A stretch of DNA of 64,000 bases from Schmidtea nova (lineage: Eukaryota), in the NCBI GenBank assembly GCA_044892505.1, contig CM097883.1, positions 360,778,001 through 360,842,000 on the forward strand, in the 5' to 3' direction. Shown here in pieces: positions 9,154 through 59,852 of this stretch (its first letter is position 1; every line of letters starts with the position of its first letter). Below the pieces are notes generated by a model. The model searched no databases. It was not told the origin of the DNA and was given only the letters and a program-made list of their open reading frames with translations. Position numbers and translations under genes: made by a program.

Positions 9154-9920
9154 GGCGACGCTCTGATATGGGTCACCCGATTTTCAAAAAAATAATTAAT
9201 TAAATTTAAATTAAAATCTATAATTAAATCAATATGTTAATGCAGTTAGTAAATAACCCAAGTAATCGGTGGTGAAGGAATCATCGTGGAAATAGATGAA
9301 ACGTTGATTTCTAAAAAGCCCAAATACTACAGGGGTAGGTGGTATCGAGAAATATGGTTATTTGGAGGTACAGAAAGAGGCAGCGGAAAATGGTTTGGTC
9401 AAGTTGTCATGCTACGAAATAGGGAGACGCTTATTGATAATATAAAAAAATTCATAAGACCTAATTCAATTATTTATTCGGATCGGTGGCCAGCGTACTG
9501 GACGGAAAAATACAATCTTGAAATGCTTGATGGGTTTGATTATATTCATTTGTCGGTTAACCACAAACTATTTTTTAAAGATCCGGTCACTGGTGTGCAT
9601 ACCAACAAGGCTGAAGGTTGGTGGGGGAATATTAAGGTGGACATGCGGAAACGGAGAGGAATGTCTCTCGAACAAAAAATCAATTATCTGGATTTTCGAT
9701 TATGGTTATCTCGCCAGGATTACGAAAATACTAATATCCTTTCAATCTATTGGGGATTAATTAGTAGATACTATCCTCCTAATAAAACGGCAATTTAATT
9801 TTGTTTGTATGTGTATAATTATATTTGTAATTTGGTTATGTTTTAATTTTGGTTTCATTTTAATTTAAATTTAATTAATTATTTTTTTGAAAATCGGGTG
9901 ACCCATATCAGAGCGTCGCC
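9154..9920 (+). mobile_element. Merlin (IS1016/IS1595-like) DNA transposon, 767-bp internally deleted copy
   Basis: Perfect 64-bp TIRs starting GGCGACGCTC; 8-bp TSD GCTTTTGC at 9146-9153 and 9921-9928; ISXO2-like ORF inside. Confidence 0.9.
9253..9798 (+). CDS. ISXO2-like (Merlin) DDE transposase catalytic domain, N-terminally truncated
   Basis: IGGEGIIVEIDET...WLFGG.ER...IIYSDRWPAY...H..VNH..F.DP.TGVHTN..EG.W motifs. No upstream ATG (in-frame TAA at 9250). Confidence 0.85.
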   Translation: MTQVIGGEGIIVEIDETLISKKPKYYRGRWYREIWLFGGTERGSGKWFGQVVMLRNRETLIDNIKKFIRPNSIIYSDRWPAYWTEKYNLEMLDGFDYIHLSVNHKLFFKDPVTGVHTNKAEGWWGNIKVDMRKRRGMSLEQKINYLDFRLWLSRQDYENTNILSIYWGLISRYYPPNKTAI

Positions 9921-17604: not shown

Positions 17605-17920
17605 AAAATATTGAATGAAGCTTTTGCAGATAAAAATCATCACAAAATATGTTCTGTTACCAATGTTCTGCTACTAGGGTTCTGTTAGATTGGTACTTAT
17701 ACTTGAGATTATTGATAAATGAATAAAAATATTCAGTATGAGCTTTTGCATATAAAAACCACACAAAAGATGTTCTGCTACTAATGTTCTGTTAGGAAGG
17801 TTTTGTTACTTGAGATTATTGATACATGAATGAAAATATTCAGTATGAGCTTTTACATATAAAAACCATCACAAAAGATGTTCTGCTACTAAGGTTCTGA
17901 TATTAATGTTCTGCTAATAG
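17605..17920. repeat. Degenerate direct repeats of about 110-120 bp (3 copies) with GTTCTG(C/T)TA sub-repeats
   Basis: AATATT...GAGCTTTT.CA.ATAAAAA.CA.CACAAAA.ATGTTCTG at about 17608, 17728 and 17836. Confidence 0.75.
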
Positions 17921-19169
17921 GGTTCAACTACTGTGTTACTCATCACATTTCAAGTCTGAGTTGTTGATATAAATCACTGTGATGCATATTACGCATGTGT
18001 GAAACACTTTTACTGTATATGTCATGTTATGCATGTACTACATGAGTCATGCACTTGTATTGCAAATGTTATGCACTTGTATTGTTTGTGTCATTGCTTG
18101 TGTCATACACTTGTGGAATTCAGGAACATGCATATTTTCTAACATTTCCCTTAAATAATAATCGATTTTACAAATTTTAATTAGTATTTTCAGAGTAAAT
18201 TTAATACAAACTAGTAAAGAATATTGAGAATTTCTGTATTTATTAACCAATCATTTATTAATCAATGATTTTGGGTACTTCATGATGATATAAAATGGGT
18301 TAAGTTATTGTAAAATGATTGAAAAATGATAAAACAACGACCATTATTACCCTGTACATTCAATTATAGAAATCTTTACAAGTGTAAAAACCATTAATTT
18401 TCAACTAATTACTCATTGGCTTTTTATAATATGTCAAAATACTTGTATTTTAATCAAACTTTGAGTTAGTTTCTATAGTCAATTTCTTAATTGTGCAAAA
18501 ACAACGATTTTTTTATTCATAATCCATGACTAGTTGATGGGATTGGAGTGATATGTTTTCTCGGCATCGGACACTAGGATTTGTAAACTTGATATGATTT
18601 CATCATCTTTTTCTTTAGATAAAAGACCATCAATCAAATTTATAATAAATATTTCTTGTTTCATTTTATAAATAATCATAAATTTTCAAGTATTTATACA
18701 AATTTATCCAAAAAATAGTAATAAAAAATAGTAATAAAAATAATATTAAAANNNNNNNNNNNNNNNNNNNNNNNNNNNNNNNNNNNNNNNNNNNNNNNNN
18801 NNNNNNNNNNNNNNNNNNNNNNNNNNNNNNNNNNNNNNNNNNNNNNNNNNNNNNNNNNNNNNNNNNNNNNNNNNNNNNNNNNNNNNNNNNNNNNNNNNNN
18901 NNNNNNNNNNNNNNNNNNNNNNNNNNNNNNNNNNNNNNNNNNNNNNNNNNNNNNNNNNNNNNNNNNNNNNNNNNNNNNNNNNNNNNNNNNTGTGTAATAC
19001 ATATTAGTAATACATTTACAGAACACTTGCGTGTCATGTGCAGAACACATGCATGAAAAATTTAGAAGAAAAAAAATCCTATCCAAAATATTTTTTTCGA
19101 TATCTCGAACTTTCATAAAATTTAATTTAAAAAAAATTTCTTTGTTAAACGAACATAGAAACATTTTTA

Positions 19170-19412
19170 AAATGTCTTTGTTTGGTTTATCTTTTTTAAA
19201 GACCGTTTCCGGCTACAGCTTTGACGATAACAAAAAATTATTTCTAAGATAAAAGTCTTAAAATATTTTCATCTTTCCAGAACACTAATATCATTTTTCA
19301 AATGAGCTTTGGTTCAAGCTATAGGGGGGTTACTTTTGTTTGATTTATCTTTTTTGAAGACCGTTTCCGGCTACAGCATTGACCATTTGAAAAGTCTATA
19401 ATGAGATAAAAG
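19170..19412. repeat. Tandem subterminal-type repeat array split by the Gypsy insertion (continues at 36247-36560)
   Basis: The unit GGTTTATCTTTTTGAAGACCGTTTCCGGCTACAGCATTGA...GATAAAAGTCTTAG occurs on both sides of the element; the empty site reads GATAAAAGTCTTAG. Confidence 0.8.
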
Positions 19413-20399
19413 TGTTGAGGATACCTAAATTCAAAATAATATAATAAATAAACAAAATTACTTGGGGGAAAATTGTCATGGGGAATGACACGATTGATTG
19501 GAGCCTGGGAAAGAAAACGGAAGTAAAAAGGAATGAGAAATGAGAAGGGGAAACAAAAGAAAAGAAATCAGACAAGCAAAACGAAATAGAGGTCAGCACT
19601 AATTAACTAGTGCAAATAGGAAGAAATTCTAAAGTTGGGAAAAACAAAAACAACAACAAGAATTTTATCTTGACAACCGGTCAGAGATAATGTGGGCAAA
19701 AAGCAAACAAGCCGAAGCGGCAAAAAGGAGAAAAACAGAGGTTATCTTGACAGCTGTCAAAGATAACTCCGTTGCTGAAAAAATGAATGGAAAATCATGT
19801 TGGAAAAATGTAACAACAGCTGATAATTTTAAGTGCTACAAAGTGAAGAAGTATAAAAGGAGGAAGCATCTCAGAAAGAAACACAACATTGTATACAGAA
19901 GTGGTTAGAGAAAATATTTGAGAGAAAGCGTTTGAGAAAATAAAGCTAGTAAAATTCATTAAAAAGGAAGCAGAAAAACGTCCAGAGAAAGTTAAAGAAG
20001 AGTCAAAAGGAGAATCCAATAATTGAAACCAGAAACTAAGGGATAAGCAGCAGGAGCTTATTCAAGCGTTGAGAAAATAAAGCTAGTAAAATTCAGAGAG
20101 TAAATCCAAGTCAAATAAAGAAAACAACCAGTCAAATTACCAATTGTTATACTCCCCAGCAGTGAGTGATTTCGAACATCGATTATACACTAGTGCTATT
20201 CTTCACTATAGTGTCGTAATAAGCACTGTATAATCAGCTGTAGTTTGAATTTGGTCAGTTCATTGTAAATCGAAGTTATTTGTGATAATCAATAAAATTT
20301 CCTGTTGTCAGTTGTTATTGTGGGTCAATAAAGAGCACGTTTTGGAGTCAGGGTAATAATTTGTTAATTATAAAGTCACCAACGAAAGATAACCCAACA
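19413..20399 (+). repeat. 5' LTR (987 bp)
   Basis: TGTTGAGGATACC...GATAACCCAACA; matches 35261-36246. Confidence 0.97.
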
Positions 20400-20404
20400 T
20401 TATT

Positions 20405-20422
20405 TGGTGAGCCCGACGTGAT
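20405..20422 (+). promoter_or_regulatory. Primer binding site complementary to the tRNA-Trp 3' end
   Basis: TGGTGAGCCCGACGTGAT begins 5 nt after the LTR and is a 17/18 match to the classic tRNA-Trp PBS TGGTGACCCCGACGTGAT. Confidence 0.88.
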
Positions 20423-20636
20423 CAAACGTTGGTGAGGAGCGATTGAAAAAGTAATTGGGATATATCCGGCGAAATAAAGTGGTGAAGAATTATTGAAATA
20501 AAATTTATTGAAGAGATAGTGAAAATAATTGTGAGGAAAAGAAAATACTAAACAAAATTGTGAAAAGGTAAATTATTAATTGTTGTAATAAATTTGAATT
20601 TAGATTTTGCGAAACTTGAGAAAATAATTTATTAAA

Positions 20637-23600
20637 GTGAGTCGATATAATTTACGAAGCAAAAGTAAAAAGGAACCCATAATGAGTAGTGAAGATTTGC
20701 CAGTATCAGTTATTAAAGAAAATAATGATTTTGCAAGTTGTCAAAGATTACCTGTGGAACAATATGGAGGAGATCCGGTTATTTTTGTAGATTTTATGAG
20801 TGATTACTACATGTATGCAACGGCGTACGGATGGTCTCAAGCGATTATGATTCAGAGATTACCTTTATATCTTAAAGGAGCAGCTAGAGAGGTTTGGCAA
20901 CAGATTGATAAAAAATTAATTGGTAATGATTGGGCAAAGTTGAAAGATGCGTTAGCTGCAAAACTTATCGGAGGAGATATCAAAAGATTAATGCGTCAAA
21001 AGTTTTATAGTAGAGTTCAAAATCCAAATGAAACAGTGAGCGAATTTGCGTATCATTTGTCAACCCTCGCAAGTAAATCATTTGAAGAAGACTCAAAACA
21101 ACCAGGCCTAGCCCAACAAATGCAAGAATTAATCCAAGACCAATTTTTGTCAGGAATAAACAAAGAAATAAAAACCGCATTATGCTGTGTAGATTATGAT
21201 AATTTTGATGAACTAGTAAAAAAGGCAATGAAAATCGAATTGAATTTGAAGAGCACCAAAAACAAATCTGATGTGTTCGCGATTATTCCAGCTCAAAGGG
21301 AAAGATCAATTACACCAACCCAAAACAATTGGGAGCCAGAAAATAGATTCCAGCGATCAAAAAGTCCATCACCCAAATGGAGAACCGAGTTAAATATAAA
21401 TAGACCAAGCCGTAATTTCCAAGGCGCTGAGAGATCCAGAGTGATCCAGTGTGAAAATTGCAAGAAGATTGGCCATTATGCAAACCAGTGTTGGTTCAAA
21501 AATAATTCCGATAGTACACCCAGAAGAATAACCCAAGATTATCGTACAAACGATAGGGGAACCAATTTTCGGAGAACAGTTCCTGATATAAAATCCAATG
21601 TTAATGAAGTGCAATGTTATCGCTGCGGTAGAAAAGGACATGTTTCCAGAAATTGTTTTTCAAGATCAAGATCACCCTCAACTTCACCTTCACCACAGAG
21701 AGACAATGTAAATTTGAACGGACAAATTCAATGCCATTTATGTAGAAATTATGGACATATTGCAAGATCCTGTCCAAGAAATACGAATAAATTTCAAAGG
21801 CCAATATTAAAGCGAACAATAAGATTTCAAGATGAAAATCCATCGAATGACAATATAGCCTATGTTCAGCAAGATGGTTTTAGAGAAAAGATCGAAAGCG
21901 ATGTTAAACAGTTGAACCAAAAACTGAATAAATTGATAGCCAAATTTGAATCGGATGAAGAAACAGATACCCACATGATGACGAGGAAAGAGTTGAGCGA
22001 AAGCGAGTCAGAATCAGATAAAGTACAAATCAATAAAGCTAAAGCCGACATACAAAGTGAAAGGAGTACTGTATTTATTGCCAAAATCAGAAAGTTAGTT
22101 GCGGAACCAGACGTAAATTCCCAGAAAATAACAGAATTATTTACGAGGCTAACTAAAATACCTTTAAGTCTGACAAAAATTAAAACTGTTATTAAACTTT
22201 GTGCAGAATGTTATGCAGCAAGTGTGGAAAAACGAGATGTATTCAAAGATTTTATGAGAATATTTGGGCAATATCTACGGAAAAATAAATGGTTAGATCC
22301 TATATTTATCCAAATGAATGCTCCAGATGGTACAAAATCCAACTATAAAATCGATGCATACGAGAAAGTACGCGAGCTAAAAAGAGAAGTAATGCACAAG
22401 TGTGAAAGTTGGGCGGTGGAACTCAAATTTATGGATCAAGTATTAGAGGATGGCGAATTCTTGGTAGATTATGGATTAATTCCTGGCGGTGAAAATGAAA
22501 TGCAAATGACGAATATGATCGCCAAGGAAAAAACAGTAACAAATGACTCTGACGAAATCAGATTTGAACTAATGGAAGCATTGCTTAAAGGAAACACAGG
22601 TGACATTATTGATAAATTAAATAATATTTTGAATTTAGAACTCAAAGTAGAAGACAAGTTAAAAATTCTAGACTGTGTTAGACCCTATATGAATGCGGAA
22701 AACGAATATGGTAAAACAATAAAAACTCTTATTCAAAAATTTGGTCAAGAATTCAGGGAAGAAGGGATTTATAATGAGCCATTCGTAGTACTGTTAAAAA
22801 TAAATGGTCAAGGAGTAGAATATACGGATGAACATTGGTATACGAAAGTGAATAAAATTCGTCGAAGAACAGCAGAAATCATGGGCAATGATGGAATAAT
22901 TGTGCTGACGTATAAAGGTTTTGAGCTAGACGATGATGAATATTTATTTGATTGTGGATGTATGCCACGAAAGCGTAACGAAGATAGATTTCTTACGGAT
23001 CAAAATTTTATTAATGATATAATTGCAGTGAAACAAGTGGATACAGATGAAGTAGAAAAAGGTTATAAAATTGAATTACCAGAGTTCGGCAGTGAAACAA
23101 TGGATAATGAGGATGAAATATCAAAGGAACAAGAAATGACAGAACATGGAGAGGAACAGGAAACTGAGCAGAGAATTGATGAAAGTATAATAAAAACGGA
23201 AGTTAAAAATGAAGCGTATATGACAGAAATGGAGATTGATAATATTACGGAGGAAAGACAACGCAAAGATTTATACGAGGTGAGATGTGAAATAATACAG
23301 AGACTCCAAGGTGAGAGAGGTCAGAAGGAATTAAAAGAGACTGAAAAGGTTGTACGTGCGCTGGCAAATGAATTATATGGCGAAGCAGCAGAGAAAACAC
23401 AAGTAGAATTATATGTGAGAAAAATTGCAAAAAAGTTGAAAAAGAGACTTTATGTGGTCTTGAGATATGTAAAAGACAACAAGGAATTCTGTGATGATGG
23501 AGTGATAACCAATATGATGACAGGAGAAATGGATAGAGATTTAGTATTGACAATTACGAGTTATATTTTGTTAGAAATCGGGACACATGATTATGTAAAT

Positions 23601-26600
23601 ATGGAAAAACGAGATGAAGTAATCAAAAAGGCGAGCAAAGTATTGTATAAGCATGTGGGCAAATGGATAAAGGAAATTGGAGGCTGGGAGAAATTAGTTA
23701 AACAAAAAACAGAATCATCAGTCGAAAAGAGAGAAAGTTACGAAGGAATACCGAGAGGTAAACCTATGAAACTTCCATTTATAATGTTTATGATCATAAT
23801 ATTATGTGCGATTACGACGCAAACAACATCTTTAATTGCGTACGATTGTTCTCAAACCAAAATGGGAAAGATTTATTCCATGGTGGACATGACAGAATGT
23901 TCTGATGCACACCCAATGAGTTTAACAGTTGAAAATGATGTAAAGTATCATGTATACCAAGAATCAGGCTTTAGACATGCGGTAGTAAGAGAGTGCATTG
24001 TAAAGAGAACGAGCTTTGTGTTTTATTGTGGCAAATGGAGTCACACATCACTAATTAAAATGTATTCAATCCCAAGGCCAGTTGATATAAACCCAGAAAA
24101 TTGCATGGCTGCGTTTCAAACAGGGGAAGTGAAAATTAGCCCCGAGGTTAAATTGAAAGCTAAATTAAATCATGCTATACGAGAAACAATTATCGAAAAA
24201 GGAACAATAAAGGCTAATGGGGATTGTAAAGGAGAACCGTACAAAATGAATGGAGAAATTATTGATCAAATTGTTGTGATGGAAGAGTATTTGACGGAAT
24301 TGAGAGAATTCCAAGGAGCTTTTGATGACGACACAGGCAAGTTACAAACGCATCCATTCTGCAATATGAAGCAGGCTAACTGTCAAACAGGAGAATCAAT
24401 TTTGGTGTACGAAGTTAAGACAAATCTATGTAATTTAATACATTTGAAAACAATGAGTTTTAATGAAATGAGTGGAGAACAGTTGAGAGAAAGACCGGAA
24501 AATTTGAATGTGGAGGCAAAACCGGACATGACAATCAGAATTACCCCATTGAGAACCAGAAAAACTCCAGTTGTTTTGATGTCAACTTTATTAGATGACG
24601 GTATGAGATTTATTCGAAAAAATGTGGTAAATAAATGTGGTCAAACGGTGTATGAGACCAATTATAAAGGAATTTATGTATCCAAGAAAAGAGTCGAGGA
24701 AGCTCAAGTCCAAATACATAGTACGGATATCAAATTGACAAATTATTTTAATAACAAAATAGACTATTTGTTCCACTACAGTCAAAGTATTATGGAAAAT
24801 ATTTACAGAGAAATGATATTAAACGATTGTAAGTTGAATAAAGAAATACTACGGAACAGAATGGCGATGGCAGTCACAAATCCAAACTTGGTAGCACCTA
24901 TGTTAATATCAGAAAACGGTGTGTTTGCAAGAGTATTTGGAGAAGCATTGTATAGCTACAAATGCAACGAGATTCCCGTGCAAATTATAAAGTACGAGCA
25001 ATGTACCAATGAATTGCCAGTAAGTGTTAATGGTAAATTGAGATTCATGGAGCCAATAACTCGAATATTGTTGGAAGAAGACGCGAAACCTAAACTTTTA
25101 AAATGTAACCGATTGCTCGCACCATTATATCGACTAACATCAGATTCGTGGATATCATTACCAGATCATAAAGGAGTAAGAAATCCAGAAAAATTAGAAT
25201 TAACAAAACTTGAATATTTAATAAATTTTACATCATTGGACAAATTAGCACAAACTGGGTTGTATTCTCAAGAAGATGTTGAAGAAGCCCGAAGAAATCT
25301 ACTATTTCCATCAAAGAAAGAACGAGTCATTACTGAAATGATTGATACTATATTACCAAGTGGTGAAGGCAAAGTAAATTATGATTATTTACTAACACCA
25401 GATCATTATAAGAAAGCAGCGTACAATACGATGAAAAAGATATGGGGGAAATTCATGTTTTTGGGACAAGCATGTGCAGGATTAATTGGAATTTATGTTA
25501 TGTTCGTGGTGATTAAAGTGATAATATCTCAAATACTAACTACTCATCAGCTATATGTTATTTCGGGATGGTCCTGGAAACTGATTATCGGATGTATTCC
25601 ATTTCTGGCAAGATTTGTAATTACAAAGCATCAATATAAAGAGATGGGGAAAGTCAAGTCACGACTAAATAATGACGGAAGAGACATTGATTCGAGTTCG
25701 GACAGCGAGAGTGGGAATGGGGGTAAAGTAAAAGTACCTCCAATATATTATTATAAAAACAGTAAAATTAAAATTAATGATATACGAGAAAAATCTAAAT
25801 CTTTGAATTTATTACAATCGGTACCACAAACAAGTGAAACAGACACATTCAGGCGATTATGCATTCCAAAAACTTTTCTACCAACAGCACCAATATATCC
25901 AGTAGAGAAGTTAAAAGAAATGAGACCAGTTGAAAACATTGAATTGACAAATGAGCAAATCGCACCAACTAGTGCAGAAATTGAAAGGAGAAACATGCTG
26001 GGATTACCAGGAAATTATGCATTAATGACAATTGGAAATAAAGGAAGACAGCCAAGAATATGGATACAAGTGAATAAACATAGAGTCGAAGCATTAATAG
26101 ATTCAGGCTCAAGCAATACAATATTATCAGATAAATTATTAAATTCAGGGGAAAGAGCACGAATGAAAAGCACAGAAGAAGTTGTACGATCAATGACGAA
26201 AAACAAATTAAATATCATTGGACAGATCAGAGTAAAATTCAATATTGGAAATAAAGAAATTGTTCATAATGCGCTAATAATGAAAGATAGCCCAGTAATG
26301 TGTTTGGTAGGGATGGATGTGTTGGAGCAATTGGAAGGAGTCTCTCTTGATTTGAAAACCGGAAATCTAATTGTAGGGAAAACAGGAAAAGTTATTCATG
26401 AAACGGGAGATGTGTTTCTAAATCAAACGTTAAGAGTACCACCTCAGAGTGAAGTTATTTGTTATGTGAATACAATGAGAGTTCCAGACGATGAATTTAT
26501 ATTTCAACCAAGTGAGAATTTAATTGCCAAATATGATACTCCAATATGCGACGAAGTAGTGAAAGTTCAAGATCAATTAATTCCTGTTCGCATCACTAAC

Positions 26601-29600
26601 AATAGCGACAAAGAAGTGTCATTTAAACCAAAAACGAAATTAGGAAAGCTAACAAAAATCCAAAAAATCAATAATAAAAGATTACCAAAAAATATTAAAA
26701 TATACAAAGAACCCCAAGTTGACAGTGCAGAGTTGACGCAAGAGCAAACACAAACATTTACAAAATTGTTGAGAAAATATCAAGATATTTTTGCGAAACA
26801 TGAGTATGATTTGGGAGTAACTCATATAATTGAACATGAAATTCCATTAATTGATGAAACTCCAATTAAATTACGACCATACAGAATTCCGTATGCGCAT
26901 CAAGACGAAAGCGATAGACAAATAAAGGCTATGAAAGAATTCCATATTATTAGAGACAGTTTTTCACCATTTTCTTCCTCTATTGTTGTAGTCAAAAAGA
27001 AAGACGGTGAACTGAGATTTTGTATTGACTACCGAAAACTGAATCAAGTGACAAGAAAGGATACGTATCCCATTCCGGTTCCTCAGGAAATGTTTGACAA
27101 AATGGGAGAAGCTCAATATTTTACTGTTATTGATTTAAACAAAGGCTACAATCAATTCAAAGTTAAAGAGACAGATAAAGGGAAAACAGCGTTTTCAGAT
27201 GGAAAAGGTTTGTATGAATTTAATGTTTTACCATTTGGTTTAACAGGTGCACCAGCGACATTTCAAAGAGGAATGAATTTTGTGCTGCGAGATATTCCAC
27301 ACGCCTTGGTATATATTGATGATATTATAATCTTCTCAGGTAATTTCAAAGAGCACATGAGAGATGTGGAAACAGTATTTAAACGGCTCAGAGAAGCAAA
27401 TCTCAAAATTAAACCATCAAAATGTGAATGGGGAAAGTCAGAGGTAGTGTATGTTGGACATATTATTTCACGAAAAGGTCTACAACCAAATCCAGAAAAT
27501 GTTAAGAAAATTAAAGATTATCCAACTCCAAAAAATGTTGATGATATTAGACAATTTCTCGGGTTAGCAAGCTATTACAGAAAATTTATTAGAAACTTTG
27601 CACATGTTGCTCAACCATTAACGATGCTATTAAAGAAAACCACAAAATTCGTGTGGGGCAAAGCTCAGCAGGATATTTTCGAAATACTCAAACAAAAGTT
27701 AATGATGAATCCAATATTACGATGTCCTGATTTCACAAAGACATTTATGTTAATGACGGACGCAAGCGGTTTTGCGTTGGGAGCGGTATTAGGACAAAAG
27801 GTTGAAGGAGAAAAAGATCATGTAATCGCATATGCTAGTCGATCATTGAAACCACATGAGAAAAACTATTCAACAATCGAAAAAGAAACTCTTGCTCTAG
27901 TATATGGCATAACAACATTTCGACAGTACTTAGTTGGCCGAAAATTCATTGTCTATACAGACCATAATCCATTACAATGGTTAATGAAGCATCGAGATGC
28001 AGCAAGTAAATTAATTAGGTGGTCGTTAGCCTTGCAAGAATATGACTTTGAAATCAAATATCGAACAGGAAAATCAAATGCTAATGCTGATACCTTGTCT
28101 AGAATTCCAAATGAGGAAATTAATAATAACCAGGAAGAAATAAATTTAAGAGATACTGTATTTGCAGTAGTTAAAGCAGCAAATAATATGGCAGAGCTAC
28201 AGAGAGATCAAGAAATGGATGAGGAGCTGAAACAAATAATAAAACATACAGTAATAATGAAAAAAGATAAAGAATTGAAACAATTAATCGAGGAAAAACA
28301 TAAATATGTTATTCACAGAGGTATATTAAAATATATTAAAAATGATGAATTGTTAATAGTGGTTCCAATAATACATCGAAATACGTTATTATTACAGTAC
28401 CATGACATGGCATTGGGAGGACATTTGTCAGCAAGAAAAACACTGTCGCGAATAAAACTAAAATATTTCTGGAATACAATGGAGCAGGATGTAAAGCAAT
28501 GGTGCAACACTTGCAAAATATGCCTGACTCGAAGAAATACTGGAAAGAAAATAAAGGTTCCTCTAAAACCAATGCCAATACCAGCAGCGCCAATGGAATT
28601 TTCAGCAATGGATATCATCGGGCCTTTACCCGAGACAACGAATGGAAATAAATACATTTTGGTATTCTGTGATTATTTAACCAAATGGCCAGAAGCGTTT
28701 GCTATGCCAAACCAAAAGGCAGAAACTGTTGCACAAATATTTGTTGAAGAAATCATATTTAGATATGGAGTTCCAAAGAAATTGCTAACAGATCAAGGGA
28801 CAAACTTTCAGAGTGATCTGTTTAAATCTATTACAGAATTATTTGGTATATATAAATTGAGCACATCACCATATCATCCACAAACAGATGGGTTAGTGGA
28901 AAGATTTAATGGTACATTAATTAATATGATCTCATCCTACGTGAATCGAAAGCAAAAAGACTGGGATCTGTTCATTAGACCATGCTTATATGCCTATCGA
29001 AATTCAGTAAATGAGAGTACGGGAGAAACGCCCTTTTATCTTATGTACCTAAGACGAAATAATATGCCAATCGATTTAGAGTTCCAATCACCAACTTCCC
29101 AATATTTAGAGATTCCAAATTATAAAGTTGCTCTGCAAGAACGTTTACAATCCGCTTGGACTCAAGCCGGATTAAAAATAAAATATCGACAGGAGCAATA
29201 TAAAGAAAGTTACGATAAAAAAGCGCATGAGCACGGAATAAAAATTGGCGACCTAGTGTATCTAAATAAGCCAGAGCCAACAAAGGGACTCTCAACAAAA
29301 TTACAAAGACCATTCAAAGGTCCGTATACGGTCTGTGATGCGACTGCAACAAATCTAAAATTGCGACCAATTAATAATAAAAAAGCAGAAACAATTGTAG
29401 TTCATGCCAATAGATGTAAGAAAGTGCCTGAACTGGAACATCAGCTACGAAATAAACAAAACAAAACAAATGATGAAATAGAAATCCGGCAAAAGTTCCA
29501 AAAAAATCCAACTCCATTGAGTTATATGAATAAAGTTTTATTCATAACGACAGTTTTAATAAATATGGTAACGAACACAGTTGGAATAAAAATGGATATA

Positions 29601-30326
29601 CCATATGCGGTCAATAAATTACCATCTTTAGAGAAAATAGACGTATACTTAATGAAAGTAGTTCTCACTCTTAATCTGTCAAGGAACAATTACAAAAAAC
29701 CACTTCGTAATAAAGGAATTTATACAAACAATCAATTGTTTGAAAGAAATGTTCAAATTGAGATGATATACTGGAATAAAACGAATCAAGTTCAAATTGA
29801 AAATTGTGATACTACAATAATTGTTTCATATAAAGCTGAGGTCGAGGGAAAAGTAACTATTATTATAAATAATAAAATTAAGGTGGTATTGAATGAACAC
29901 CGAAACAGAGCGAGAGTCAGTACTCAGAACTCAGGAACCGAATCACAAACAAGCAAACTCCTTATAGCAAACCAATGCAGCAAAGGGAAAACCAATCCAG
30001 ACCGATGGCAAACTATATGCATAAAAGACAGACAGATCTATTTCGTTCTCGATCAACCCTCTAAACAAACCCTTGATCACAATCTAACTCTACCATTAAC
30101 TCTTTCATGTACAAAAATCGAAAACTTTTCATTAAACTATAAAGAAAATTCATTCACTAACAATTGTGTTGATATGTTTTCTGTATGTATCATAATGGCA
30201 AGACCAAGAGTGATCTTGCTCATTTGCTTTATCCTCATTTCACGAACTGACAAAAGAAACAATTCTAATTGTGATTTTCAATATTCTGAGTCGCAGATAT
30301 CAATGCGGTTGGAATCAAGGGTGTAG
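20637..30326 (+). CDS. 3229-aa Gag-UBL-UBL-Bcl2-like-Env-PR-RT-RNaseH-IN polyprotein
   Basis: No internal stop. Gag core, 3 CCHC knuckles, DSG protease (26100), YIDD (27312), TDAS/EKE/TDH RNase H, HHCC + D,D,E integrase and a GPY motif. GTG at 20637; first ATG at 20682. Confidence 0.95.
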   Translation: MSRYNLRSKSKKEPIMSSEDLPVSVIKENNDFASCQRLPVEQYGGDPVIFVDFMSDYYMYATAYGWSQAIMIQRLPLYLKGAAREVWQQIDKKLIGNDWAKLKDALAAKLIGGDIKRLMRQKFYSRVQNPNETVSEFAYHLSTLASKSFEEDSKQPGLAQQMQELIQDQFLSGINKEIKTALCCVDYDNFDELVKKAMKIELNLKSTKNKSDVFAIIPAQRERSITPTQNNWEPENRFQRSKSPSPKWRTELNINRPSRNFQGAERSRVIQCENCKKIGHYANQCWFKNNSDSTPRRITQDYRTNDRGTNFRRTVPDIKSNVNEVQCYRCGRKGHVSRNCFSRSRSPSTSPSPQRDNVNLNGQIQCHLCRNYGHIARSCPRNTNKFQRPILKRTIRFQDENPSNDNIAYVQQDGFREKIESDVKQLNQKLNKLIAKFESDEETDTHMMTRKELSESESESDKVQINKAKADIQSERSTVFIAKIRKLVAEPDVNSQKITELFTRLTKIPLSLTKIKTVIKLCAECYAASVEKRDVFKDFMRIFGQYLRKNKWLDPIFIQMNAPDGTKSNYKIDAYEKVRELKREVMHKCESWAVELKFMDQVLEDGEFLVDYGLIPGGENEMQMTNMIAKEKTVTNDSDEIRFELMEALLKGNTGDIIDKLNNILNLELKVEDKLKILDCVRPYMNAENEYGKTIKTLIQKFGQEFREEGIYNEPFVVLLKINGQGVEYTDEHWYTKVNKIRRRTAEIMGNDGIIVLTYKGFELDDDEYLFDCGCMPRKRNEDRFLTDQNFINDIIAVKQVDTDEVEKGYKIELPEFGSETMDNEDEISKEQEMTEHGEEQETEQRIDESIIKTEVKNEAYMTEMEIDNITEERQRKDLYEVRCEIIQRLQGERGQKELKETEKVVRALANELYGEAAEKTQVELYVRKIAKKLKKRLYVVLRYVKDNKEFCDDGVITNMMTGEMDRDLVLTITSYILLEIGTHDYVNMEKRDEVIKKASKVLYKHVGKWIKEIGGWEKLVKQKTESSVEKRESYEGIPRGKPMKLPFIMFMIIILCAITTQTTSLIAYDCSQTKMGKIYSMVDMTECSDAHPMSLTVENDVKYHVYQESGFRHAVVRECIVKRTSFVFYCGKWSHTSLIKMYSIPRPVDINPENCMAAFQTGEVKISPEVKLKAKLNHAIRETIIEKGTIKANGDCKGEPYKMNGEIIDQIVVMEEYLTELREFQGAFDDDTGKLQTHPFCNMKQANCQTGESILVYEVKTNLCNLIHLKTMSFNEMSGEQLRERPENLNVEAKPDMTIRITPLRTRKTPVVLMSTLLDDGMRFIRKNVVNKCGQTVYETNYKGIYVSKKRVEEAQVQIHSTDIKLTNYFNNKIDYLFHYSQSIMENIYREMILNDCKLNKEILRNRMAMAVTNPNLVAPMLISENGVFARVFGEALYSYKCNEIPVQIIKYEQCTNELPVSVNGKLRFMEPITRILLEEDAKPKLLKCNRLLAPLYRLTSDSWISLPDHKGVRNPEKLELTKLEYLINFTSLDKLAQTGLYSQEDVEEARRNLLFPSKKERVITEMIDTILPSGEGKVNYDYLLTPDHYKKAAYNTMKKIWGKFMFLGQACAGLIGIYVMFVVIKVIISQILTTHQLYVISGWSWKLIIGCIPFLARFVITKHQYKEMGKVKSRLNNDGRDIDSSSDSESGNGGKVKVPPIYYYKNSKIKINDIREKSKSLNLLQSVPQTSETDTFRRLCIPKTFLPTAPIYPVEKLKEMRPVENIELTNEQIAPTSAEIERRNMLGLPGNYALMTIGNKGRQPRIWIQVNKHRVEALIDSGSSNTILSDKLLNSGERARMKSTEEVVRSMTKNKLNIIGQIRVKFNIGNKEIVHNALIMKDSPVMCLVGMDVLEQLEGVSLDLKTGNLIVGKTGKVIHETGDVFLNQTLRVPPQSEVICYVNTMRVPDDEFIFQPSENLIAKYDTPICDEVVKVQDQLIPVRITNNSDKEVSFKPKTKLGKLTKIQKINNKRLPKNIKIYKEPQVDSAELTQEQTQTFTKLLRKYQDIFAKHEYDLGVTHIIEHEIPLIDETPIKLRPYRIPYAHQDESDRQIKAMKEFHIIRDSFSPFSSSIVVVKKKDGELRFCIDYRKLNQVTRKDTYPIPVPQEMFDKMGEAQYFTVIDLNKGYNQFKVKETDKGKTAFSDGKGLYEFNVLPFGLTGAPATFQRGMNFVLRDIPHALVYIDDIIIFSGNFKEHMRDVETVFKRLREANLKIKPSKCEWGKSEVVYVGHIISRKGLQPNPENVKKIKDYPTPKNVDDIRQFLGLASYYRKFIRNFAHVAQPLTMLLKKTTKFVWGKAQQDIFEILKQKLMMNPILRCPDFTKTFMLMTDASGFALGAVLGQKVEGEKDHVIAYASRSLKPHEKNYSTIEKETLALVYGITTFRQYLVGRKFIVYTDHNPLQWLMKHRDAASKLIRWSLALQEYDFEIKYRTGKSNANADTLSRIPNEEINNNQEEINLRDTVFAVVKAANNMAELQRDQEMDEELKQIIKHTVIMKKDKELKQLIEEKHKYVIHRGILKYIKNDELLIVVPIIHRNTLLLQYHDMALGGHLSARKTLSRIKLKYFWNTMEQDVKQWCNTCKICLTRRNTGKKIKVPLKPMPIPAAPMEFSAMDIIGPLPETTNGNKYILVFCDYLTKWPEAFAMPNQKAETVAQIFVEEIIFRYGVPKKLLTDQGTNFQSDLFKSITELFGIYKLSTSPYHPQTDGLVERFNGTLINMISSYVNRKQKDWDLFIRPCLYAYRNSVNESTGETPFYLMYLRRNNMPIDLEFQSPTSQYLEIPNYKVALQERLQSAWTQAGLKIKYRQEQYKESYDKKAHEHGIKIGDLVYLNKPEPTKGLSTKLQRPFKGPYTVCDATATNLKLRPINNKKAETIVVHANRCKKVPELEHQLRNKQNKTNDEIEIRQKFQKNPTPLSYMNKVLFITTVLINMVTNTVGIKMDIPYAVNKLPSLEKIDVYLMKVVLTLNLSRNNYKKPLRNKGIYTNNQLFERNVQIEMIYWNKTNQVQIENCDTTIIVSYKAEVEGKVTIIINNKIKVVLNEHRNRARVSTQNSGTESQTSKLLIANQCSKGKTNPDRWQTICIKDRQIYFVLDQPSKQTLDHNLTLPLTLSCTKIENFSLNYKENSFTNNCVDMFSVCIIMARPRVILLICFILISRTDKRNNSNCDFQYSESQISMRLESRV
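20750..21773 (+). other. Gag capsid region and three CX2CX4HX4C zinc knuckles
   Basis: LPLYLKGAAREVW...RVQNPNETVSEF...DQFLSGI; knuckles start at 21450, 21615 and 21732. Confidence 0.92.
22299..22510 (+). other. Ubiquitin-like domain 1 (about aa 555-625)
   Basis: LKFMDQVLEDGEFLVDYGL aligns with ubiquitin LIFAGKQLEDGRTLSDYNI; preceded by a beta-beta-alpha pattern. No di-Gly terminus. Confidence 0.75.
22779..22990 (+). other. Ubiquitin-like domain 2 (about aa 715-785)
   Basis: VLTYKGFELDDDEYLFDCG; same layout as UBL1, 160 aa downstream. Confidence 0.62.
23268..23705 (+). other. Bcl-2-like domain (about aa 878-1023)
   Basis: BH2-like KVLYKHVGKWIKEIGGWEKLV (compare Bcl-xL TYLNDHLEPWIQENGGWDTFV), BH3-like VVRALANEL, and a degenerate BH1 at about the expected spacing. 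Confidence 0.68.
23766..25630 (+). other. Env-like glycoprotein, chuvirus-G/class III fusion type, with signal peptide and C-terminal TM
   Basis: MKLPFIMFMIIILCAITT signal, then LIAYDC; Cys pattern ...NDCKLNKEIL...NP...GEALYSYKC..C.NELPV...F.EP.TRIL...C; TM at 25452 onward followed by SGWSWKL. Confidence 0.85.
26040..26370 (+). other. Retropepsin (aspartic protease)
   Basis: VEALIDSGSSNTIL...CLVGMDVLEQL. Confidence 0.93.
26760..28110 (+). other. Reverse transcriptase and RNase H
   Basis: RFCIDYRKLN, LPFGLTGAPATFQ, YIDDIII, FLGLASYYRKFI, TDASGFALGAVL, EKETLA, TDHNPL. Confidence 0.97.
28380..29420 (+). other. Integrase (HHCC, DDE core, GPY/F)
   Basis: YHD..LGGH...C..C; AMDIIGP; LTDQGTNF; DGLVERFN; RPFKGPY. 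Confidence 0.96.
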
Positions 30327-30599
30327 TAAGCTACTATTTTGCATGTAATGACAATATACAGTATTATTTCCCTTATATTTCTTTAGTTAATGATTCTTTA
30401 ATAATCAATTGATAATCTTTTGTTGTAAAATATGTTGTTAAAATTTAAATTATATTGATGTAATTTGATTGGTCGAATAATCACACTGTAGGGGGAGAGA
30501 ATTTTTGGATATAATGATGGCGGTGGTTTTCAGAGTTTGACTTGGAAAATTTTTAAAGAAAAAAAAAAAAAAACGATCAAAATTAAATCTAAAGGAAGA

Positions 30600-32016
30600 A
30601 TGGAAAAAATCAACAGACCAGCAAGATTATACGGGAAATATTATCAAGAAAGAAGAAGCTATACAGACAAAGTTATCGTAATAGAAGAAAATTTGAAAAT
30701 TCCTAATTGGGTAAGGTTAGGGAATGAAGAAATGAGAATATGTATGGTGGAATTGGAATGGAAATCCAATACGAAATTTTCAGAAGTGTTAATAAGAAGA
30801 AACGAAGAGACATGGGAGGTTCATGTTTTTAAAGGAAGAGTAGAAATTTTAGAGAATGATGCAACGGTTCTACAAACATTGGAAACTAATTCATCATGGA
30901 AGATATCAAAAGAAATATGGCATAAGAAGATGCGAGCAGCCAATGGAACGGCTTGCATTGTTTTAGAATGCCGAGGACCAGCTCCAACAATCCCGGCATT
31001 AGAACAAATTATGACCAATGAAGAAGAAAATAGGTTACTCCCGATAACCGAAGAAATGTTAAAGCACCGAAAATCATTTTTGAGAAAACAAATGACAAAA
31101 GAAGAAATTAGAAAAAATATTATGTTCATGGACGCGGAATATGGCGTAAGTGAGCAAAACAAGATGGTTCCGCTGTCTATTTGTTTAATAAACTATGACG
31201 GAAGAATATTGTATAACTCATTAATAACCCCCAGAGAAAAGCTAAAAAATTACGTTACCCAAATTCACGGCATCACAGAGAAGATGTCAAGAAATCAAGA
31301 TGATCAATACAAGAGTCAGAGGAAAATTCAGCAATTAACGGCAAGGAAAATCTTGATTGGACATGATCTCCAAAGCGAACTATTATACAGTGGAGTACAG
31401 ACAAGGGATCTATGGGGGTATTCGCGATTTGGCGGCAGCTCGAGCATTGACAAAAAGAAGAGTCACAAGGAACGGGCAATGGTATAAATTGTCAATAGTA
31501 GCCGAAGAAATATGTGGCATCAGAATGCAAAAAGGGAATCATACGGCATTAGAAGACACTGATGCAATTATAAGAATTTATTTGGCCATAGAAAATGAAT
31601 GGCAGGATGATGTAGAGTGTGCTGAAACAACCAGCAAAAGAAAATATTCGTTAGAAGAGTATAGGAAAAGAAAGGCTCCAACAACCAGTGAGCAGATGGA
31701 GGAACCAAAAGAGAAGAGGAAAGCAGAAGTTCAGCAAATGGAACAAGACATTCACATGGTGGAACACATGCATATTGCTCGTGAGAAAACTGCGAAAATG
31801 ATGGTTGAGAAAAAACTTGATTTATTTAAAAATGCAATTGTGGAAATGGACAAAATAATGATGCAACAAAATAGTGTTGAAAAAGGAAATCAAACAAAAG
31901 AAGGAATAGTGGTCGATAAGATGATCACGTTCAATGGTGAGGAATTGGAAGCAACAAAGGTTGTCGTCACGTATAGAGGAAGAAACCAAACTATCAAAAT
32001 TGTAATTGATAAATAG
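30600..32016 (+). CDS. Accessory ORF2: cupin-like domain + DEDDh 3'-5' exonuclease (REXO4/ISG20-like) + charged tail; one frameshift near 31414-31418
   Basis: ExoI FMDAEY (31131), SICLINYDG.ILYNSLITP.EK..NY.T.IHGIT, ExoII ILIGHDLQSEL, then in the next frame IRDLA...L..VAEEI.G...Q.G.HTALED (31540-31557). Removing one G from the G5 run gives a 471-aa protein from ATG 30600. Confidence 0.82.
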
Positions 32017-58484: not shown

Positions 58485-59852
58485 TTATTGTCCTGCGTAA
58501 TTTTGTGGTGCCAAAAGCTTTGTGAGAGCTTGGGTTTGTGATGAGGTGTATTTTGACACTATCAGGGATTTGAGATCATCATACGGGTTGTCTGCGTAAA
58601 GCGCGTCGGCTATTTTCGGGGCAAGCTCGGCTATCAATTCAGATGGTAGGCTGTCGAGTAGGTAATCGGCGCGTGATTTTGGAAAGGAAGACGTGCGCGA
58701 TTCGAAAATGCGGAACCACGACGAGGGTGTGCCGTCGGGATCCAAAAAGAACAAAATTGGGCGTGAAGTGGATGAATAAGGCGGTTCTATAGTGGGTCGG
58801 ACGCCTCCTAAAACGCGGCAATGAATTTCTATGATAGCATTAGGTGGGATGTCGGTGAGTGACGAAACTGGGAAACCATTGCACGTCATGTAAAATTCAT
58901 TCCTATTAATCAGATGAGAGGTGGCGATATCAGTGCGCAGATCCGTGAAAATGGGGATTTGGCGTGTTTTGTGGTTGAAACGCGTGAGGACATATGTTGG
59001 GAAAGTGGCGAAAGAATCGTTGTTGTACATGGTGGATTGAGTGGGGTTGTGAGCGTGAATTGTATTGAATGTGTCAAAAAACTGGACAAGGTATTTGTGA
59101 ATTTTGAGAAAGATAATAAAAATAATTTTAAAATTTAGTATGAATAAAAATAATATAAATAAATATAATATATTATGTAATTTAATATTATAAATAATAC
59201 ATATAAAATACGACTCGCCCGATAATCCCAAATAGCTGTTGCAATTGTTTTGAGAAATAGACGCTTCCAGCTGCCACGCCGCTCCGTTAGTGGAACTGTG
59301 AATCACACAGGAATAGGAGCCGAGGTCGAGTTTACGCAACGGACAAGAATAACTAGCAGTTTTGAATTGAGGATAAACTTTACATTGCATGGTAAATCTT
59401 TGACCAATGACATATTGTTCAGGTAATGAGACAATGTTGACTGAGTATTCAACTGATTGCCTGTTGTAATTGACACTTTCACGCTTTCCTGTTTCTACTG
59501 ATTGACAGAATGTAGTTCCTGAGGCTGGTTGAAATGTCGAGGCTTCCAATTCCATTGTTGACCCGGTCTCAGTAGTTCCTTTAACAGCGCATTTATAAGA
59601 ACCCGAATCATCTCGTCTCAATTGTTCAAAAGTGATGCTGGTGTTTGCGAATTTCGGCATGACGTGTGCAGCTACTTGTTTTGAGTCACTTTTAGATATT
59701 TGACCAAATATCGTTGAATTTGACGAAATTGAGCTCGGTACGACAATATGCAACTTTATAGAAGATATCTGTATGAACTTTAACGACATCGATGACGATG
59801 GTGTTGATATTGAAGAAAAAATTGAATCTGATTTCTTTTTTACCAAAAACAT
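58485..59852 (-). CDS. Chimeric frame: Ser/Thr-rich + Ig-like fragments + intron-like AT tract + UBL(LGG) + Gag N-terminus
   Basis: DDSGSYKC (about 59600), DLGSYSC (about 59315), IEIHCRVLGG (GG at 58803-58808), SWFRIFE...LDSLPSE...NPYDDLKSLI. The element's own start may be ATG 59030. Confidence 0.7.
   Translation of the reverse strand: MFLVKKKSDSIFSSISTPSSSMSLKFIQISSIKLHIVVPSSISSNSTIFGQISKSDSKQVAAHVMPKFANTSITFEQLRRDDSGSYKCAVKGTTETGSTMELEASTFQPASGTTFCQSVETGKRESVNYNRQSVEYSVNIVSLPEQYVIGQRFTMQCKVYPQFKTASYSCPLRKLDLGSYSCVIHSSTNGAAWQLEASISQNNCNSYLGLSGESYFICIIYNIKLHNILYLFILFLFILNFKIIFIIFLKIHKYLVQFFDTFNTIHAHNPTQSTMYNNDSFATFPTYVLTRFNHKTRQIPIFTDLRTDIATSHLINRNEFYMTCNGFPVSSLTDIPPNAIIEIHCRVLGGVRPTIEPPYSSTSRPILFFLDPDGTPSSWFRIFESRTSSFPKSRADYLLDSLPSELIAELAPKIADALYADNPYDDLKSLIVSKYTSSQTQALTKLLAPQNYAGQ

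What the first reader, a model, noticed from the sequence alone, without database searches (positions are those of the whole stretch)
23268..23830. Bcl-2-family domain embedded between Gag and Env
Seen: KASKVLYKHVGKWIKEIGGWEKLV, a strong BH2-like match; an upstream helix VVRALANEL (BH3-like); a BH1 position where NWGR is replaced by DRDL; and a hydrophobic stretch about 20 aa after BH2. Known: large DNA viruses use divergent vBcl-2 proteins to block apoptosis, and Bcl-2 proteins are tail-anchored. Inference: a captured anti-apoptotic module, with the Env signal peptide doubling as its membrane anchor after signal-peptidase cleavage.
Basis: partly seen in the sequence, partly recalled or inferred. 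Interest (0 to 1): 0.9.

Follow-up and report, generated by a model that had tools for sequence, protein, structure and literature searches.

The report
Possible Bcl-2-like domain in retroelement
A young, intact virus-like retroelement encodes, between its capsid part and its envelope protein, a small helical domain with one good Bcl-2-like motif next to a membrane anchor; whether it is a true cell-death regulator is plausible but not shown.

Summary
The quoted strings are all present at the stated coordinates. They lie in one intact 3229-codon ORF of a 16.8-kb LTR element (19413-36246; LTRs 99.9% identical, TSD AAAG). Its order is Gag(3 CCHC) - two ubiquitin-like units - acidic linker - the ~160-aa helical module - signal peptide - class III Env (PF24664, E=2e-88) - PR-RT-RH-IN - C-terminal membrane segment. 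GAG-ENV-POL Ty3/gypsy elements are already described.

The Bcl-2 reading is neither proven nor excluded.

For it:
- Bcl-2 is the top NCBIfam hit (TIGR00865, E=0.004) and second Pfam hit (PF00452, E=0.07).
- Bcl-2 proteins dominate the Foldseek/PDB hits of two models.
- One hydrophobic helix sits among amphipathic ones, 49 aa before GGW, and a hydrophobic anchor starts 29 aa after it.

Against it:
- Both profile hits cover only the ~27 BH2 residues and fall far below cut-offs.
- The models are poor (pLDDT 47-52) and Foldseek is not significant (E>=0.2, TM~0.2).
- Searches of 1.8 and 5.8 billion proteins and of PDB sequences found nothing.
- The only relative with a collinear module has GGL and no Bcl-2 signal.

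I put a true Bcl-2 fold at about 0.4.

The parts
19409..19412 (+). Target-site duplication AAAG, left copy (right copy at 36247-36250)
   Evidence: Read directly from the flanks.
19413..20399 (+). 5' LTR, 987 nt, TG...CA ends
   Evidence: 99.9% identical to 35261-36246, with no mismatch and one gap.
20405..20422 (+). Putative primer-binding site, starting TGG 5 nt after the LTR
   Evidence: Sequence only. It was not matched to a tRNA, and no tRNA gene lies in the window.
20682..30326 (+). Single intact polyprotein ORF. It is open from 20637, the first ATG is at 20682, and the mechanical ORF is 3229 codons. No stop or frameshift.
   Evidence: A tblastn of the protein finds only this copy in the window.
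20682..21836 (+). Gag part with three CCHC zinc knuckles (aa 272-379)
   Evidence: Pfam zf-CCHC E=1.9e-9, three stretches. Regex positions.
22113..23006 (+). Two tandem units, each a helical part plus a ubiquitin-like part (aa 493-628 and 656-790)
   Evidence: Pfam ubiquitin E=0.0025, sub-threshold. UBX E=0.006 at the equivalent place of P0006. Unit 1 against unit 2 scores z=7.3 over shuffles. One copy is present in relatives P0001, P0002, P0004 and P0006.
23034..23267 (+). Acidic linker (46% charged, net -18)
23268..23756 (+). The module: ~163-aa all-helical domain (aa 878-1040), candidate Bcl-2-like
   Evidence: AF2 single-sequence models are all helix with pLDDT 47 and 52. The hydrophobic helix aa 966-982 lies among amphipathic helices. 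Foldseek top hits are Bcl-2 family but not significant. A collinear module in P0006 scores z=4.8.
23628..23699 (+). BH2-like stretch with W-x4-GGW (aa 998-1021)
   Evidence: PF00452 E=0.069, profile positions 75-100 of 100. TIGR00865 E=0.004, profile positions 147-174 of 213. Motif statistics.
23766..23831 (+). Internal signal peptide of Env (aa 1044-1065), which would serve as the C-terminal membrane tether of the module
   Evidence: Hydropathy peak of 2.0. Small residues sit at -3 and -1 before the conserved start of mature Env. The same layout is seen in all six relatives. Cleavage itself is inferred.
23832..25553 (+). Env: class III-type fusion glycoprotein ectodomain (aa 1066-1611, 16 Cys) and TM anchor (aa 1612-1639)
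   Evidence: Pfam PF24664 Monjiviricetes_fusion E=2.4e-88. Hydropathy. 37-42% identical to Env of P0001-P0006.
26046..28922 (+). Pol: protease (26046-26339), RT (26991-27467), RNase H (27654-28043), integrase (28365-28922)
   Evidence: Pfam RVP/gag-asp_proteas, RVT_1 E=3.6e-32, RT_RNaseH E=4.6e-39, Integrase_H2C2 E=4.4e-17, rve E=9.7e-10.
29424..30323 (+). C-terminal extension after integrase, with a strong TM segment (aa 3183-3201)
   Evidence: No family hit. Hydropathy 2.5. P0003-P0006 also end in a hydrophobic-start, TM-bearing extension.
30537..31487 (+). Downstream ORF (316 aa) whose C-terminal part resembles an ISG20/RNase T-type 3'-5' exonuclease
   Evidence: Pfam RNase_T 25.8 bits against a cut-off of 24, profile positions 2-91 of 164. 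PDB 1wlj (ISG20) E=9.3e-6. Only the first part of the domain is covered, and completeness was not settled.
35245..35260 (+). Polypurine tract abutting the 3' LTR
   Evidence: Sequence.
35261..36246 (+). 3' LTR

Best explanation
Shown: the flagged stretch is a ~160-residue all-helical accessory domain. It is translated as part of one giant polyprotein of a very young, intact GAG-ENV-POL Ty3/gypsy endogenous-retrovirus-like element. It sits on the cytosolic side, immediately before the internal signal peptide of a class III envelope glycoprotein.

Inferred topology: signal peptidase cuts on the lumenal side after the signal peptide. The upstream product then ends in that hydrophobic segment and stays tethered to the ER membrane like a tail-anchored protein. 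The element's protease may trim its N-terminal side.

Inferred identity: I think the domain is most likely a strongly diverged Bcl-2-fold module acquired by one sub-lineage of these elements. It keeps a BH2-type W-x4-GGW turn, a central hydrophobic helix and the BH2-to-anchor spacing, but has lost recognisable BH1 and BH3 sequence.

Inferred function: if so, it would act at ER or mitochondrial membranes of the expressing cell to modulate the cell-death machinery. The direction, pro- or anti-death, is not determinable from what I have.

It is not a demonstrated member of the Bcl-2 family.
For: - Architecture and intactness are established.
- The module is accessory. Of seven family polyproteins, only this one and P0006 have it between the ubiquitin-like unit and the signal peptide. 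The others have short or low-complexity linkers there.
- The two modules are collinear and of equal length, with SW z=4.8. The best-conserved stretch is the motif around the GG turn.
- Bcl-2 is the top named hit in NCBIfam (TIGR00865, E=0.004) and the second in Pfam (PF00452, E=0.069).
- W-x4-GGW has an expectation of 2e-5 per module.
- Both AF2 models, built with different boundaries, return almost only Bcl-2-family chains among the top 50 PDB matches: BAK, Mcl-1, Bcl-xL, A1, BOK, sponge BHP2 and Hydra HyBcl-2-4. These align over about 136-163 columns, close to the whole target.
- Several viral Bcl-2 homologues appear among the BFVD matches.
- The helix pattern is seven amphipathic segments around one low-moment hydrophobic helix (aa 966-982). 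That helix starts 49 aa before GGW, and the anchor starts 29 aa after it (17 aa in P0006).
- From my own knowledge of the family, this matches the usual BH1-BH2 and BH2-anchor spacing.
Against: - Every statistic is sub-threshold. The profile hits cover only ~27 residues, and most of the score must come from W, GG and W.
- PF00452 positions 1-74, which include BH1, do not align.
- P0006 has GGL and no Bcl-2 hit in Pfam or NCBIfam.
- The N-terminal half of the module does not align robustly between the two elements (z=1.7).
- phmmer found nothing in 1.84 billion representatives or in PDB sequences at E<=10. The word-indexed search of 5.8 billion proteins also found nothing.
- The AF2 models have pLDDT 47-52. 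Foldseek gives E 0.2-1.4, TM about 0.2 and rmsd 14-17 A. Those matches are string-level (3Di+AA) and are probably anchored by the same BH2 residues, so they are not independent evidence.
- The module is unusually charged, at 38% K/R/D/E.
- The region was selected because of the motif, so the motif statistics are inflated by selection.
Confidence: 0.4

Rival explanations
1. The module is a lineage-specific helical spacer or membrane-proximal 'matrix-like' domain of the Gag-Env junction, with no evolutionary or structural relation to Bcl-2. The W-x4-GGW string is a coincidence. Its role would be structural: holding Gag at the membrane next to Env, or providing protease-accessible linker helices.
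For: - All Bcl-2 evidence is sub-threshold and stems from one short motif.
- The motif's second W is not kept in the only homologous module.
- There was no hit in the very large protein searches.
- Relatives fill the same position with unrelated or low-complexity linkers of variable length, which shows the position tolerates arbitrary sequence.
- The charge content is high and the N-terminal half is poorly conserved.
- AF2 gives no compact confident fold.
Against: - The chance expectation of the motif in this module is about 2e-5.
- The coincidence would also have to include the right distance to a membrane anchor, the right distance from the single hydrophobic helix, and a domain size and helix count typical of Bcl-2 proteins.
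- The GG turn and its neighbours are the best-conserved part between two modules that are otherwise about 20% identical.
Confidence: 0.4
2. The module is a diverged copy of some other helical host domain, for example an ESCRT-III/Snf7-like hairpin or a BAG-type helical bundle following the ubiquitin-like unit. It would have been recruited for budding or chaperone or ubiquitin-system interactions.
For: - An archaeal ESCRT-III (CdvB2) chain is rank 1 for the longer model, and a Snf7-family protein appears in BFVD.
- The module directly follows ubiquitin-like units. From my own knowledge, that recalls the Ubl-plus-helical-domain layout of BAG1-type proteins.
Against: - These Foldseek hits are as insignificant as the Bcl-2 ones (E about 0.5) and are isolated rather than family-wide.
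- The shorter model lost them.
- There is no Pfam hit to Snf7 or BAG at E<=1-10.
Confidence: 0.1
3. The stretch is not functional protein. It would be decayed or non-coding filler that happens to be open.
For: None beyond the lack of homologues.
Against: - It lies in an uninterrupted 3229-codon frame in 34% G+C DNA, inside an element whose LTRs differ by one gap in 987 nt.
- A collinear module exists in a relative whose Env is only 40% identical.
Confidence: 0.02

Closest known systems
GAG-ENV-POL Ty3/gypsy 'errantivirus-like' endogenous retroviruses of nematodes, bryozoans and flatworms (Chary & Hayashi, eLife 2026, PMC13524379; Sacco et al. 2022, J Gen Virol, doi 10.1099/jgv.0.001739, cited there and not held in the library)
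   Same: Both have LTRs, a Gag with CCHC knuckles, a class III (gB/G-type) glycoprotein placed between gag and pol, and PR-RT-RH-IN order. Both have young intact copies.
   Different: Here everything is one continuous ORF. The Gag-Env junction carries two ubiquitin-like units and the helical BH2-bearing module. There is a further membrane segment after integrase and an exonuclease-like ORF downstream. I found none of these extras mentioned in that paper's text ('Bcl' and 'ubiquitin' occur 0 times).
Cellular and viral Bcl-2 family proteins (Pfam PF00452, TIGR00865; PDB examples returned: BAK, Mcl-1, Bcl-xL, A1, Hydra HyBcl-2-4, sponge BHP2; viral examples returned: gammaherpesvirus v-Bcl-2-like proteins)
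   Same: Shared features are the W-x4-GGW BH2-type motif, the domain size (~150-160 aa), all-helical content, a single hydrophobic helix about 49 aa upstream of GGW, and a hydrophobic membrane segment about 17-29 aa downstream.
   Different: There is no BH1 or BH3 at profile level and scores are far below family cut-offs. The fold is not confirmed. The 'tail anchor' is the signal peptide of the next protein in a polyprotein rather than the protein's own C-terminus. The domain is encoded by a retroelement rather than a cell or a large DNA virus.
Membrane-anchored capsid precursors of polyprotein RNA viruses (flavivirus anchored C, hepacivirus core), from my own knowledge
   Same: In both, a cytosolic protein is followed in the polyprotein by the signal sequence of the next, lumenal glycoprotein. 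Signal-peptidase cleavage leaves the upstream protein tethered by that signal sequence.
   Different: This is an analogy of topology only, with no sequence relation. Processing here is entirely inferred.
Extra ORFs of LTR retrotransposons, such as the DEDDy exonuclease and GDSL esterase ORF3 of bdelloid rotifer elements (Rodriguez et al. 2017, PMC5408684)
   Same: They set a precedent for retroelements carrying captured accessory modules, including a 3'-5' exonuclease downstream of pol.
   Different: The exonuclease here is of the ISG20/RNase T (DEDDh) type. No Bcl-2-like or ubiquitin-like module is reported there ('Bcl' and 'ubiquitin' occur 0 times).

Membership tests
Bcl-2 family (Pfam PF00452 / NCBIfam TIGR00865) | Profile score at or above the curated cut-off | tested here: not met
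   PF00452 scored 13.2-14.1 bits against 31.4. TIGR00865 scored 16.7-17.1 bits against 283.
Bcl-2 family (Pfam PF00452 / NCBIfam TIGR00865) | BH2 motif (W-x4-GGW turn) | tested here: met
   aa 1010-1017. Both profiles align exactly this region. In relative P0006 the last W is L.
Bcl-2 family (Pfam PF00452 / NCBIfam TIGR00865) | BH1 motif aligned by the family profile | tested here: not met
   Profile positions 1-74 of PF00452 are unaligned. The residues at the expected distance are DRDL.
Bcl-2 family (Pfam PF00452 / NCBIfam TIGR00865) | BH3 helix | tested here: inconclusive
   An amphipathic helix at aa 900-916 exists, but no profile or search recognises it.
Bcl-2 family (Pfam PF00452 / NCBIfam TIGR00865) | Bcl-2 fold (central hydrophobic hairpin wrapped by amphipathic helices) | tested here: inconclusive
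   AF2 without an alignment gave pLDDT 47 and 52. Foldseek top hits are Bcl-2 proteins, but with E 0.2-1.4 and TM about 0.2. No alignment was available to improve the model.
Bcl-2 family (Pfam PF00452 / NCBIfam TIGR00865) | C-terminal membrane anchor shortly after BH2 | tested here: inconclusive
   A hydrophobic segment is present 29 aa after GGW, but it is the Env signal peptide. Whether it stays attached is unknown.
Bcl-2 family (Pfam PF00452 / NCBIfam TIGR00865) | Binding of BH3 ligands / regulation of cell death | not testable with these tools
   No computation here bears on it.
GAG-ENV-POL Ty3/gypsy ERV-like elements | Paired LTRs with target-site duplication, PBS and PPT | tested here: met
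   987-nt LTRs at 99.9% identity, TG..CA ends, TSD AAAG, and a PPT. The PBS-like TGG site was not matched to a tRNA.
GAG-ENV-POL Ty3/gypsy ERV-like elements | Gag with CCHC, then class III glycoprotein, then PR-RT-RH-IN in that order | tested here: met
   Pfam domains and their order. The same order is seen in P0003-P0006; P0001 and P0002 show it only as far as the protease. The literature definition is in PMC13524379.

The most novel reading that the evidence does not exclude
A sub-lineage of GAG-ENV-POL metavirus-like elements has captured a Bcl-2-fold domain and expresses it from the polyprotein as a pseudo-tail-anchored protein, using the envelope signal peptide as its anchor. This would be the first Bcl-2-type cell-death regulator encoded by a reverse-transcribing element. 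It would sit alongside ubiquitin-like units and an ISG20-like exonuclease as a set of host-interaction modules.
Probability: 0.4. Interest if true: 0.85.

Novelty: new variant of a known kind. Interest (0 to 1): 0.58.

Why it matters
To my knowledge, Bcl-2 homologues are known as survival tools of large DNA viruses. The two literature searches I ran on Bcl-2 and retroelements turned up no paper reporting one in a retroelement or retrovirus.

If the fold is confirmed, it would have three consequences:
- Retroelements of invertebrates would be shown to manipulate host cell death.
- It would give a second way of making a tail-anchored protein, by borrowing the next protein's signal peptide.
- It would add a very divergent branch to the Bcl-2 family.

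Even if the Bcl-2 reading fails, the element is a notably module-rich, apparently recently inserted member of the GAG-ENV-POL group. It is one 3229-codon frame carrying capsid, two ubiquitin-like units, an accessory helical domain, a class III fusogen, Pol and a further membrane segment.

Tried and rejected
1. Single-sequence phmmer of the module against 1.84 billion representatives gave 0 hits. Against PDB sequences it also gave 0 at E<=10.
2. A word-indexed search with the module scored inside the polyprotein gave 0 hits. A search with module plus Env found only P0007, a chimeric gene model holding a 97-aa Env fragment and no module.
3. I tried to use P0006 as an alignment row for structure prediction.
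   - MAFFT scatters the short module along the 3181-aa protein.
   - Anchored variants tested locally place the N-terminal half inconsistently.
   - A sub-range of a protein id has no reference and I did not type it, so both AF2 jobs ran without an alignment.
4. Pfam and NCBIfam scans of P0006, P0001, P0002 and P0004 gave no Bcl-2 signal.
5. An apparent paramyxo/pneumovirus F-protein match of ORF 31357-32016 (PDB 8ydl, E=2.5e-5) was rejected. It is the sum of two identical 12-bit stretches in an engineered chain with a duplicated segment, each with i-E about 1.
6. An Rfam scan and a tRNA scan of the window found nothing.
7. Env ectodomain against PDB sequences found nothing at E<=0.01.

Full report
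**What is at the coordinates.** Coordinates 23268-23830 are aa 878-1065 of one + strand ORF, 20637-30326, with the first ATG at 20682.
- The BH2-like string is at aa 998-1021, with W-x4-GGW at 1010-1017.
- VVRALANEL is at aa 905-913.
- DRDL is at aa 966-969.
- A hydrophobic run is at aa 1047-1065.

**The element.**
- The ORF lies in an LTR element spanning 19413-36246. Its LTRs are 987 nt, end in TG...CA and are 99.9% identical. It has a 4-bp target duplication (AAAG), a TGG-starting PBS-like site and a polypurine tract.
- Pfam gives, in order: three CCHC knuckles; a sub-threshold ubiquitin-like signal; PF24664 Monjiviricetes_fusion glycoprotein (E=2.4e-88); aspartic protease; RT; RNase H; and integrase.
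- Hydropathy shows three strong hydrophobic segments. They are the signal peptide directly before mature Env, the Env TM anchor (aa 1612-1639) and a last one near the C-terminus (aa 3183-3201).
- Gag, Env and Pol are therefore one frame, with no stop or frameshift in 3229 codons. One assembly or masked gap (34763-34967) lies in the 3' untranslated part, and I left it alone.
- No second copy is in the window.

**Relatives.**
- A search with the Env part found six polyproteins of 2099-3181 aa from metagenome assemblies. Their Env is 37-42% identical. All have the order Gag / signal peptide / Env / protease, and P0003-P0006 continue into RT-RH-IN.
- All seven family members have a hydrophobic run with small residues just before the conserved start of mature Env.
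- Most have one ubiquitin-like unit upstream. This element has two, which arose by internal duplication (z=7.3).
- Only P0006 has a helical stretch of the same length between that unit and the signal peptide. It is collinear with ours (BLASTP; Smith-Waterman z=4.8 over shuffles).
- Only the C-terminal half of that stretch aligns robustly.
- The best-conserved stretch is the one around the GG pair. P0006 reads GGL where ours reads GGW.
- The module is thus real and lineage-restricted, that is, accessory.

**Is it Bcl-2? Sequence evidence.**
- PF00452 hits at E=0.069-0.13 (13-14 bits, cut-off 31.4) and aligns only profile positions 75-100 of 100.
- TIGR00865 'bcl-2' is the top NCBIfam hit, at E=0.004-0.005 (17 bits, cut-off 283). 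It aligns only positions 147-174 of 213.
- Both hits cover the same ~27 residues.
- BH1 is not aligned.
- P0006 gives no Bcl-2 signal.
- phmmer against 1.84 billion representatives and against PDB sequences found nothing, and so did a word-indexed search of 5.8 billion proteins.
- W-x(3-7)-GGW occurs once in the six-frame window. The expectation at fixed spacing is about 0.01 per window and 2e-5 per module.
- Because the region was chosen for this motif, these numbers overstate the evidence.

**Is it Bcl-2? Structure evidence.**
- No usable alignment could be made. MAFFT scattered the module along P0006, and a sub-range of a protein id cannot be referenced. I left the typed-letters route out.
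- Two single-sequence AF2 models, aa 862-1044 and aa 886-1035, are all-helical but of low confidence (pLDDT 47 and 52, pTM 0.40-0.41).
- Foldseek against the PDB returned Bcl-2-family chains for about 40 of the top 50 matches of each model. These were BAK, Mcl-1, Bcl-xL, A1, BOK, sponge BHP2 and Hydra HyBcl-2-4, aligned over nearly the whole target.
- Those matches have E 0.2-1.4, TM about 0.2 and rmsd 14-17 A.
- Against BFVD the list is mixed, with a few gammaherpesvirus and iridovirus Bcl-2-like proteins.
- With such models the matches are string-level and probably seeded by the BH2 residues. They point the same way but are not independent, and they are not significant.

**Geometry.**
- Seven amphipathic helical segments surround one low-moment hydrophobic helix at aa 966-982.
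- That helix starts 49 residues before GGW.
- The membrane segment starts 29 residues after GGW, and 17 in P0006.
- From my own knowledge of the family, these spacings, the size and the helix count fit a Bcl-2 domain.
- The 38% charged-residue content is higher than I would expect.

**Mechanism.**
- Shown: the order of the parts and their hydrophobic segments.
- Inferred: the N-terminal part (Gag, ubiquitin-like units, module) is cytosolic. The signal peptide inserts into the membrane, the Env ectodomain is lumenal, and the Env TM returns the chain so that Pol is cytosolic.
- Inferred: signal-peptidase cleavage would leave the module's C-terminus tethered by the signal peptide. This is analogous in topology to anchored capsid precursors of polyprotein RNA viruses (my knowledge).

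**Weighing.** I put a true Bcl-2 fold at about 0.4, an unrelated helical junction domain at about 0.4, another known helical fold at about 0.1, and non-function at about 0.02. The remaining ~0.08 I leave unassigned. An anti-death function is a further inference that I cannot support. Because BH1 and the profile cut-offs were tested and not met, I do not file it as a Bcl-2 family member.

**Known or new.**
- GAG-ENV-POL Ty3/gypsy elements with gB/G-type Env are described for nematodes, bryozoans and flatworms (PMC13524379; it cites Sacco et al. 2022, which is not held).
- That paper does not mention Bcl or ubiquitin.
- The two literature searches I ran on Bcl-2 and retroelements turned up no paper reporting one in a retroelement.
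- The element is therefore a new variant of a known kind. The module is the new and uncertain part.

**Limits and disclosures.**
- Slip: in my private reasoning I twice recalled short motif strings of cellular Bcl-2 and of ubiquitin from memory.
- The host organism is unknown to me. The DNA is about 30% G+C and repeat-rich.

Noticed in passing
window 22113-23006: There are two tandem units, each a helical part plus a ubiquitin-like part, between Gag and the module. The duplication scores z=7.3. Pfam ubiquitin E=0.0025, and UBX E=0.006 in P0006. One such unit, with a conserved acidic-DE[YF]L-x-[DE]CG-type ending, is present in most relatives. I did not find a ubiquitin-like domain in this Gag-Env position mentioned in the papers I read.
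   Followed up: partly
window 29424-30323: After integrase the polyprotein continues for ~300 aa, with a mildly hydrophobic start and a strong TM segment (aa 3183-3201). P0003-P0006 also end in a signal-like, ectodomain and TM extension. This may be a second membrane protein encoded in frame. No family hit.
   Followed up: partly
window 30537-31487: A downstream ORF inside the element has an ISG20/RNase T-type 3'-5' exonuclease match (Pfam RNase_T 25.8 bits, PDB 1wlj E=9e-6). The match covers only the first part of the domain. A precedent exists: DEDDy exonuclease ORF3 in rotifer LTR elements (PMC5408684).
   Followed up: partly
window 32017-35244: About 3.2 kb of AT-rich sequence (G+C 0.24-0.30) without notable + strand ORFs lies between the last ORFs and the polypurine tract. 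It includes an N run at 34763-34967, which I left unfilled. Its nature is unknown; it could be a long 3' UTR, decayed genes or a nested insertion.
   Followed up: no
window 19159-19355 and 36427-36619; 17663-17868: The host flanks on the two sides of the element are 85% similar to each other, so the element sits in a local repeat. A 99-nt tandem pair lies further upstream.
   Followed up: no
window 9286-9798 (+): An ORF has an ISXO2/IS1595-like DDE transposase domain (PF12762, E=3e-9). It is probably another mobile-element remnant.
   Followed up: no
window 58485-59852 (-): A 455-aa ORF has weak V-set immunoglobulin (E=5e-6) and DUF7041 (E=2.5e-6) matches. It lies in the most G+C-rich part of the window.
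   Followed up: no
P0004 (relative, protein only): A full Gag-Env-Pol polyprotein of this family is labelled in its source as a hypothetical protein of a Flavobacteriaceae metagenome-assembled genome. This is almost certainly a mis-binned eukaryotic contig.
   Followed up: no
P0001 and P0002 (relatives, proteins only): These relatives carry two to four tandem retroviral-type protease domains after Env (Pfam stretch counts).
   Followed up: no
P0007 (protein only): A 1134-aa predicted protein begins with 97 residues that are 76% identical to this element's Env (aa 1215-1311), followed by unrelated sequence. It is a gene model that has swallowed a fragment of a related copy.
   Followed up: partly
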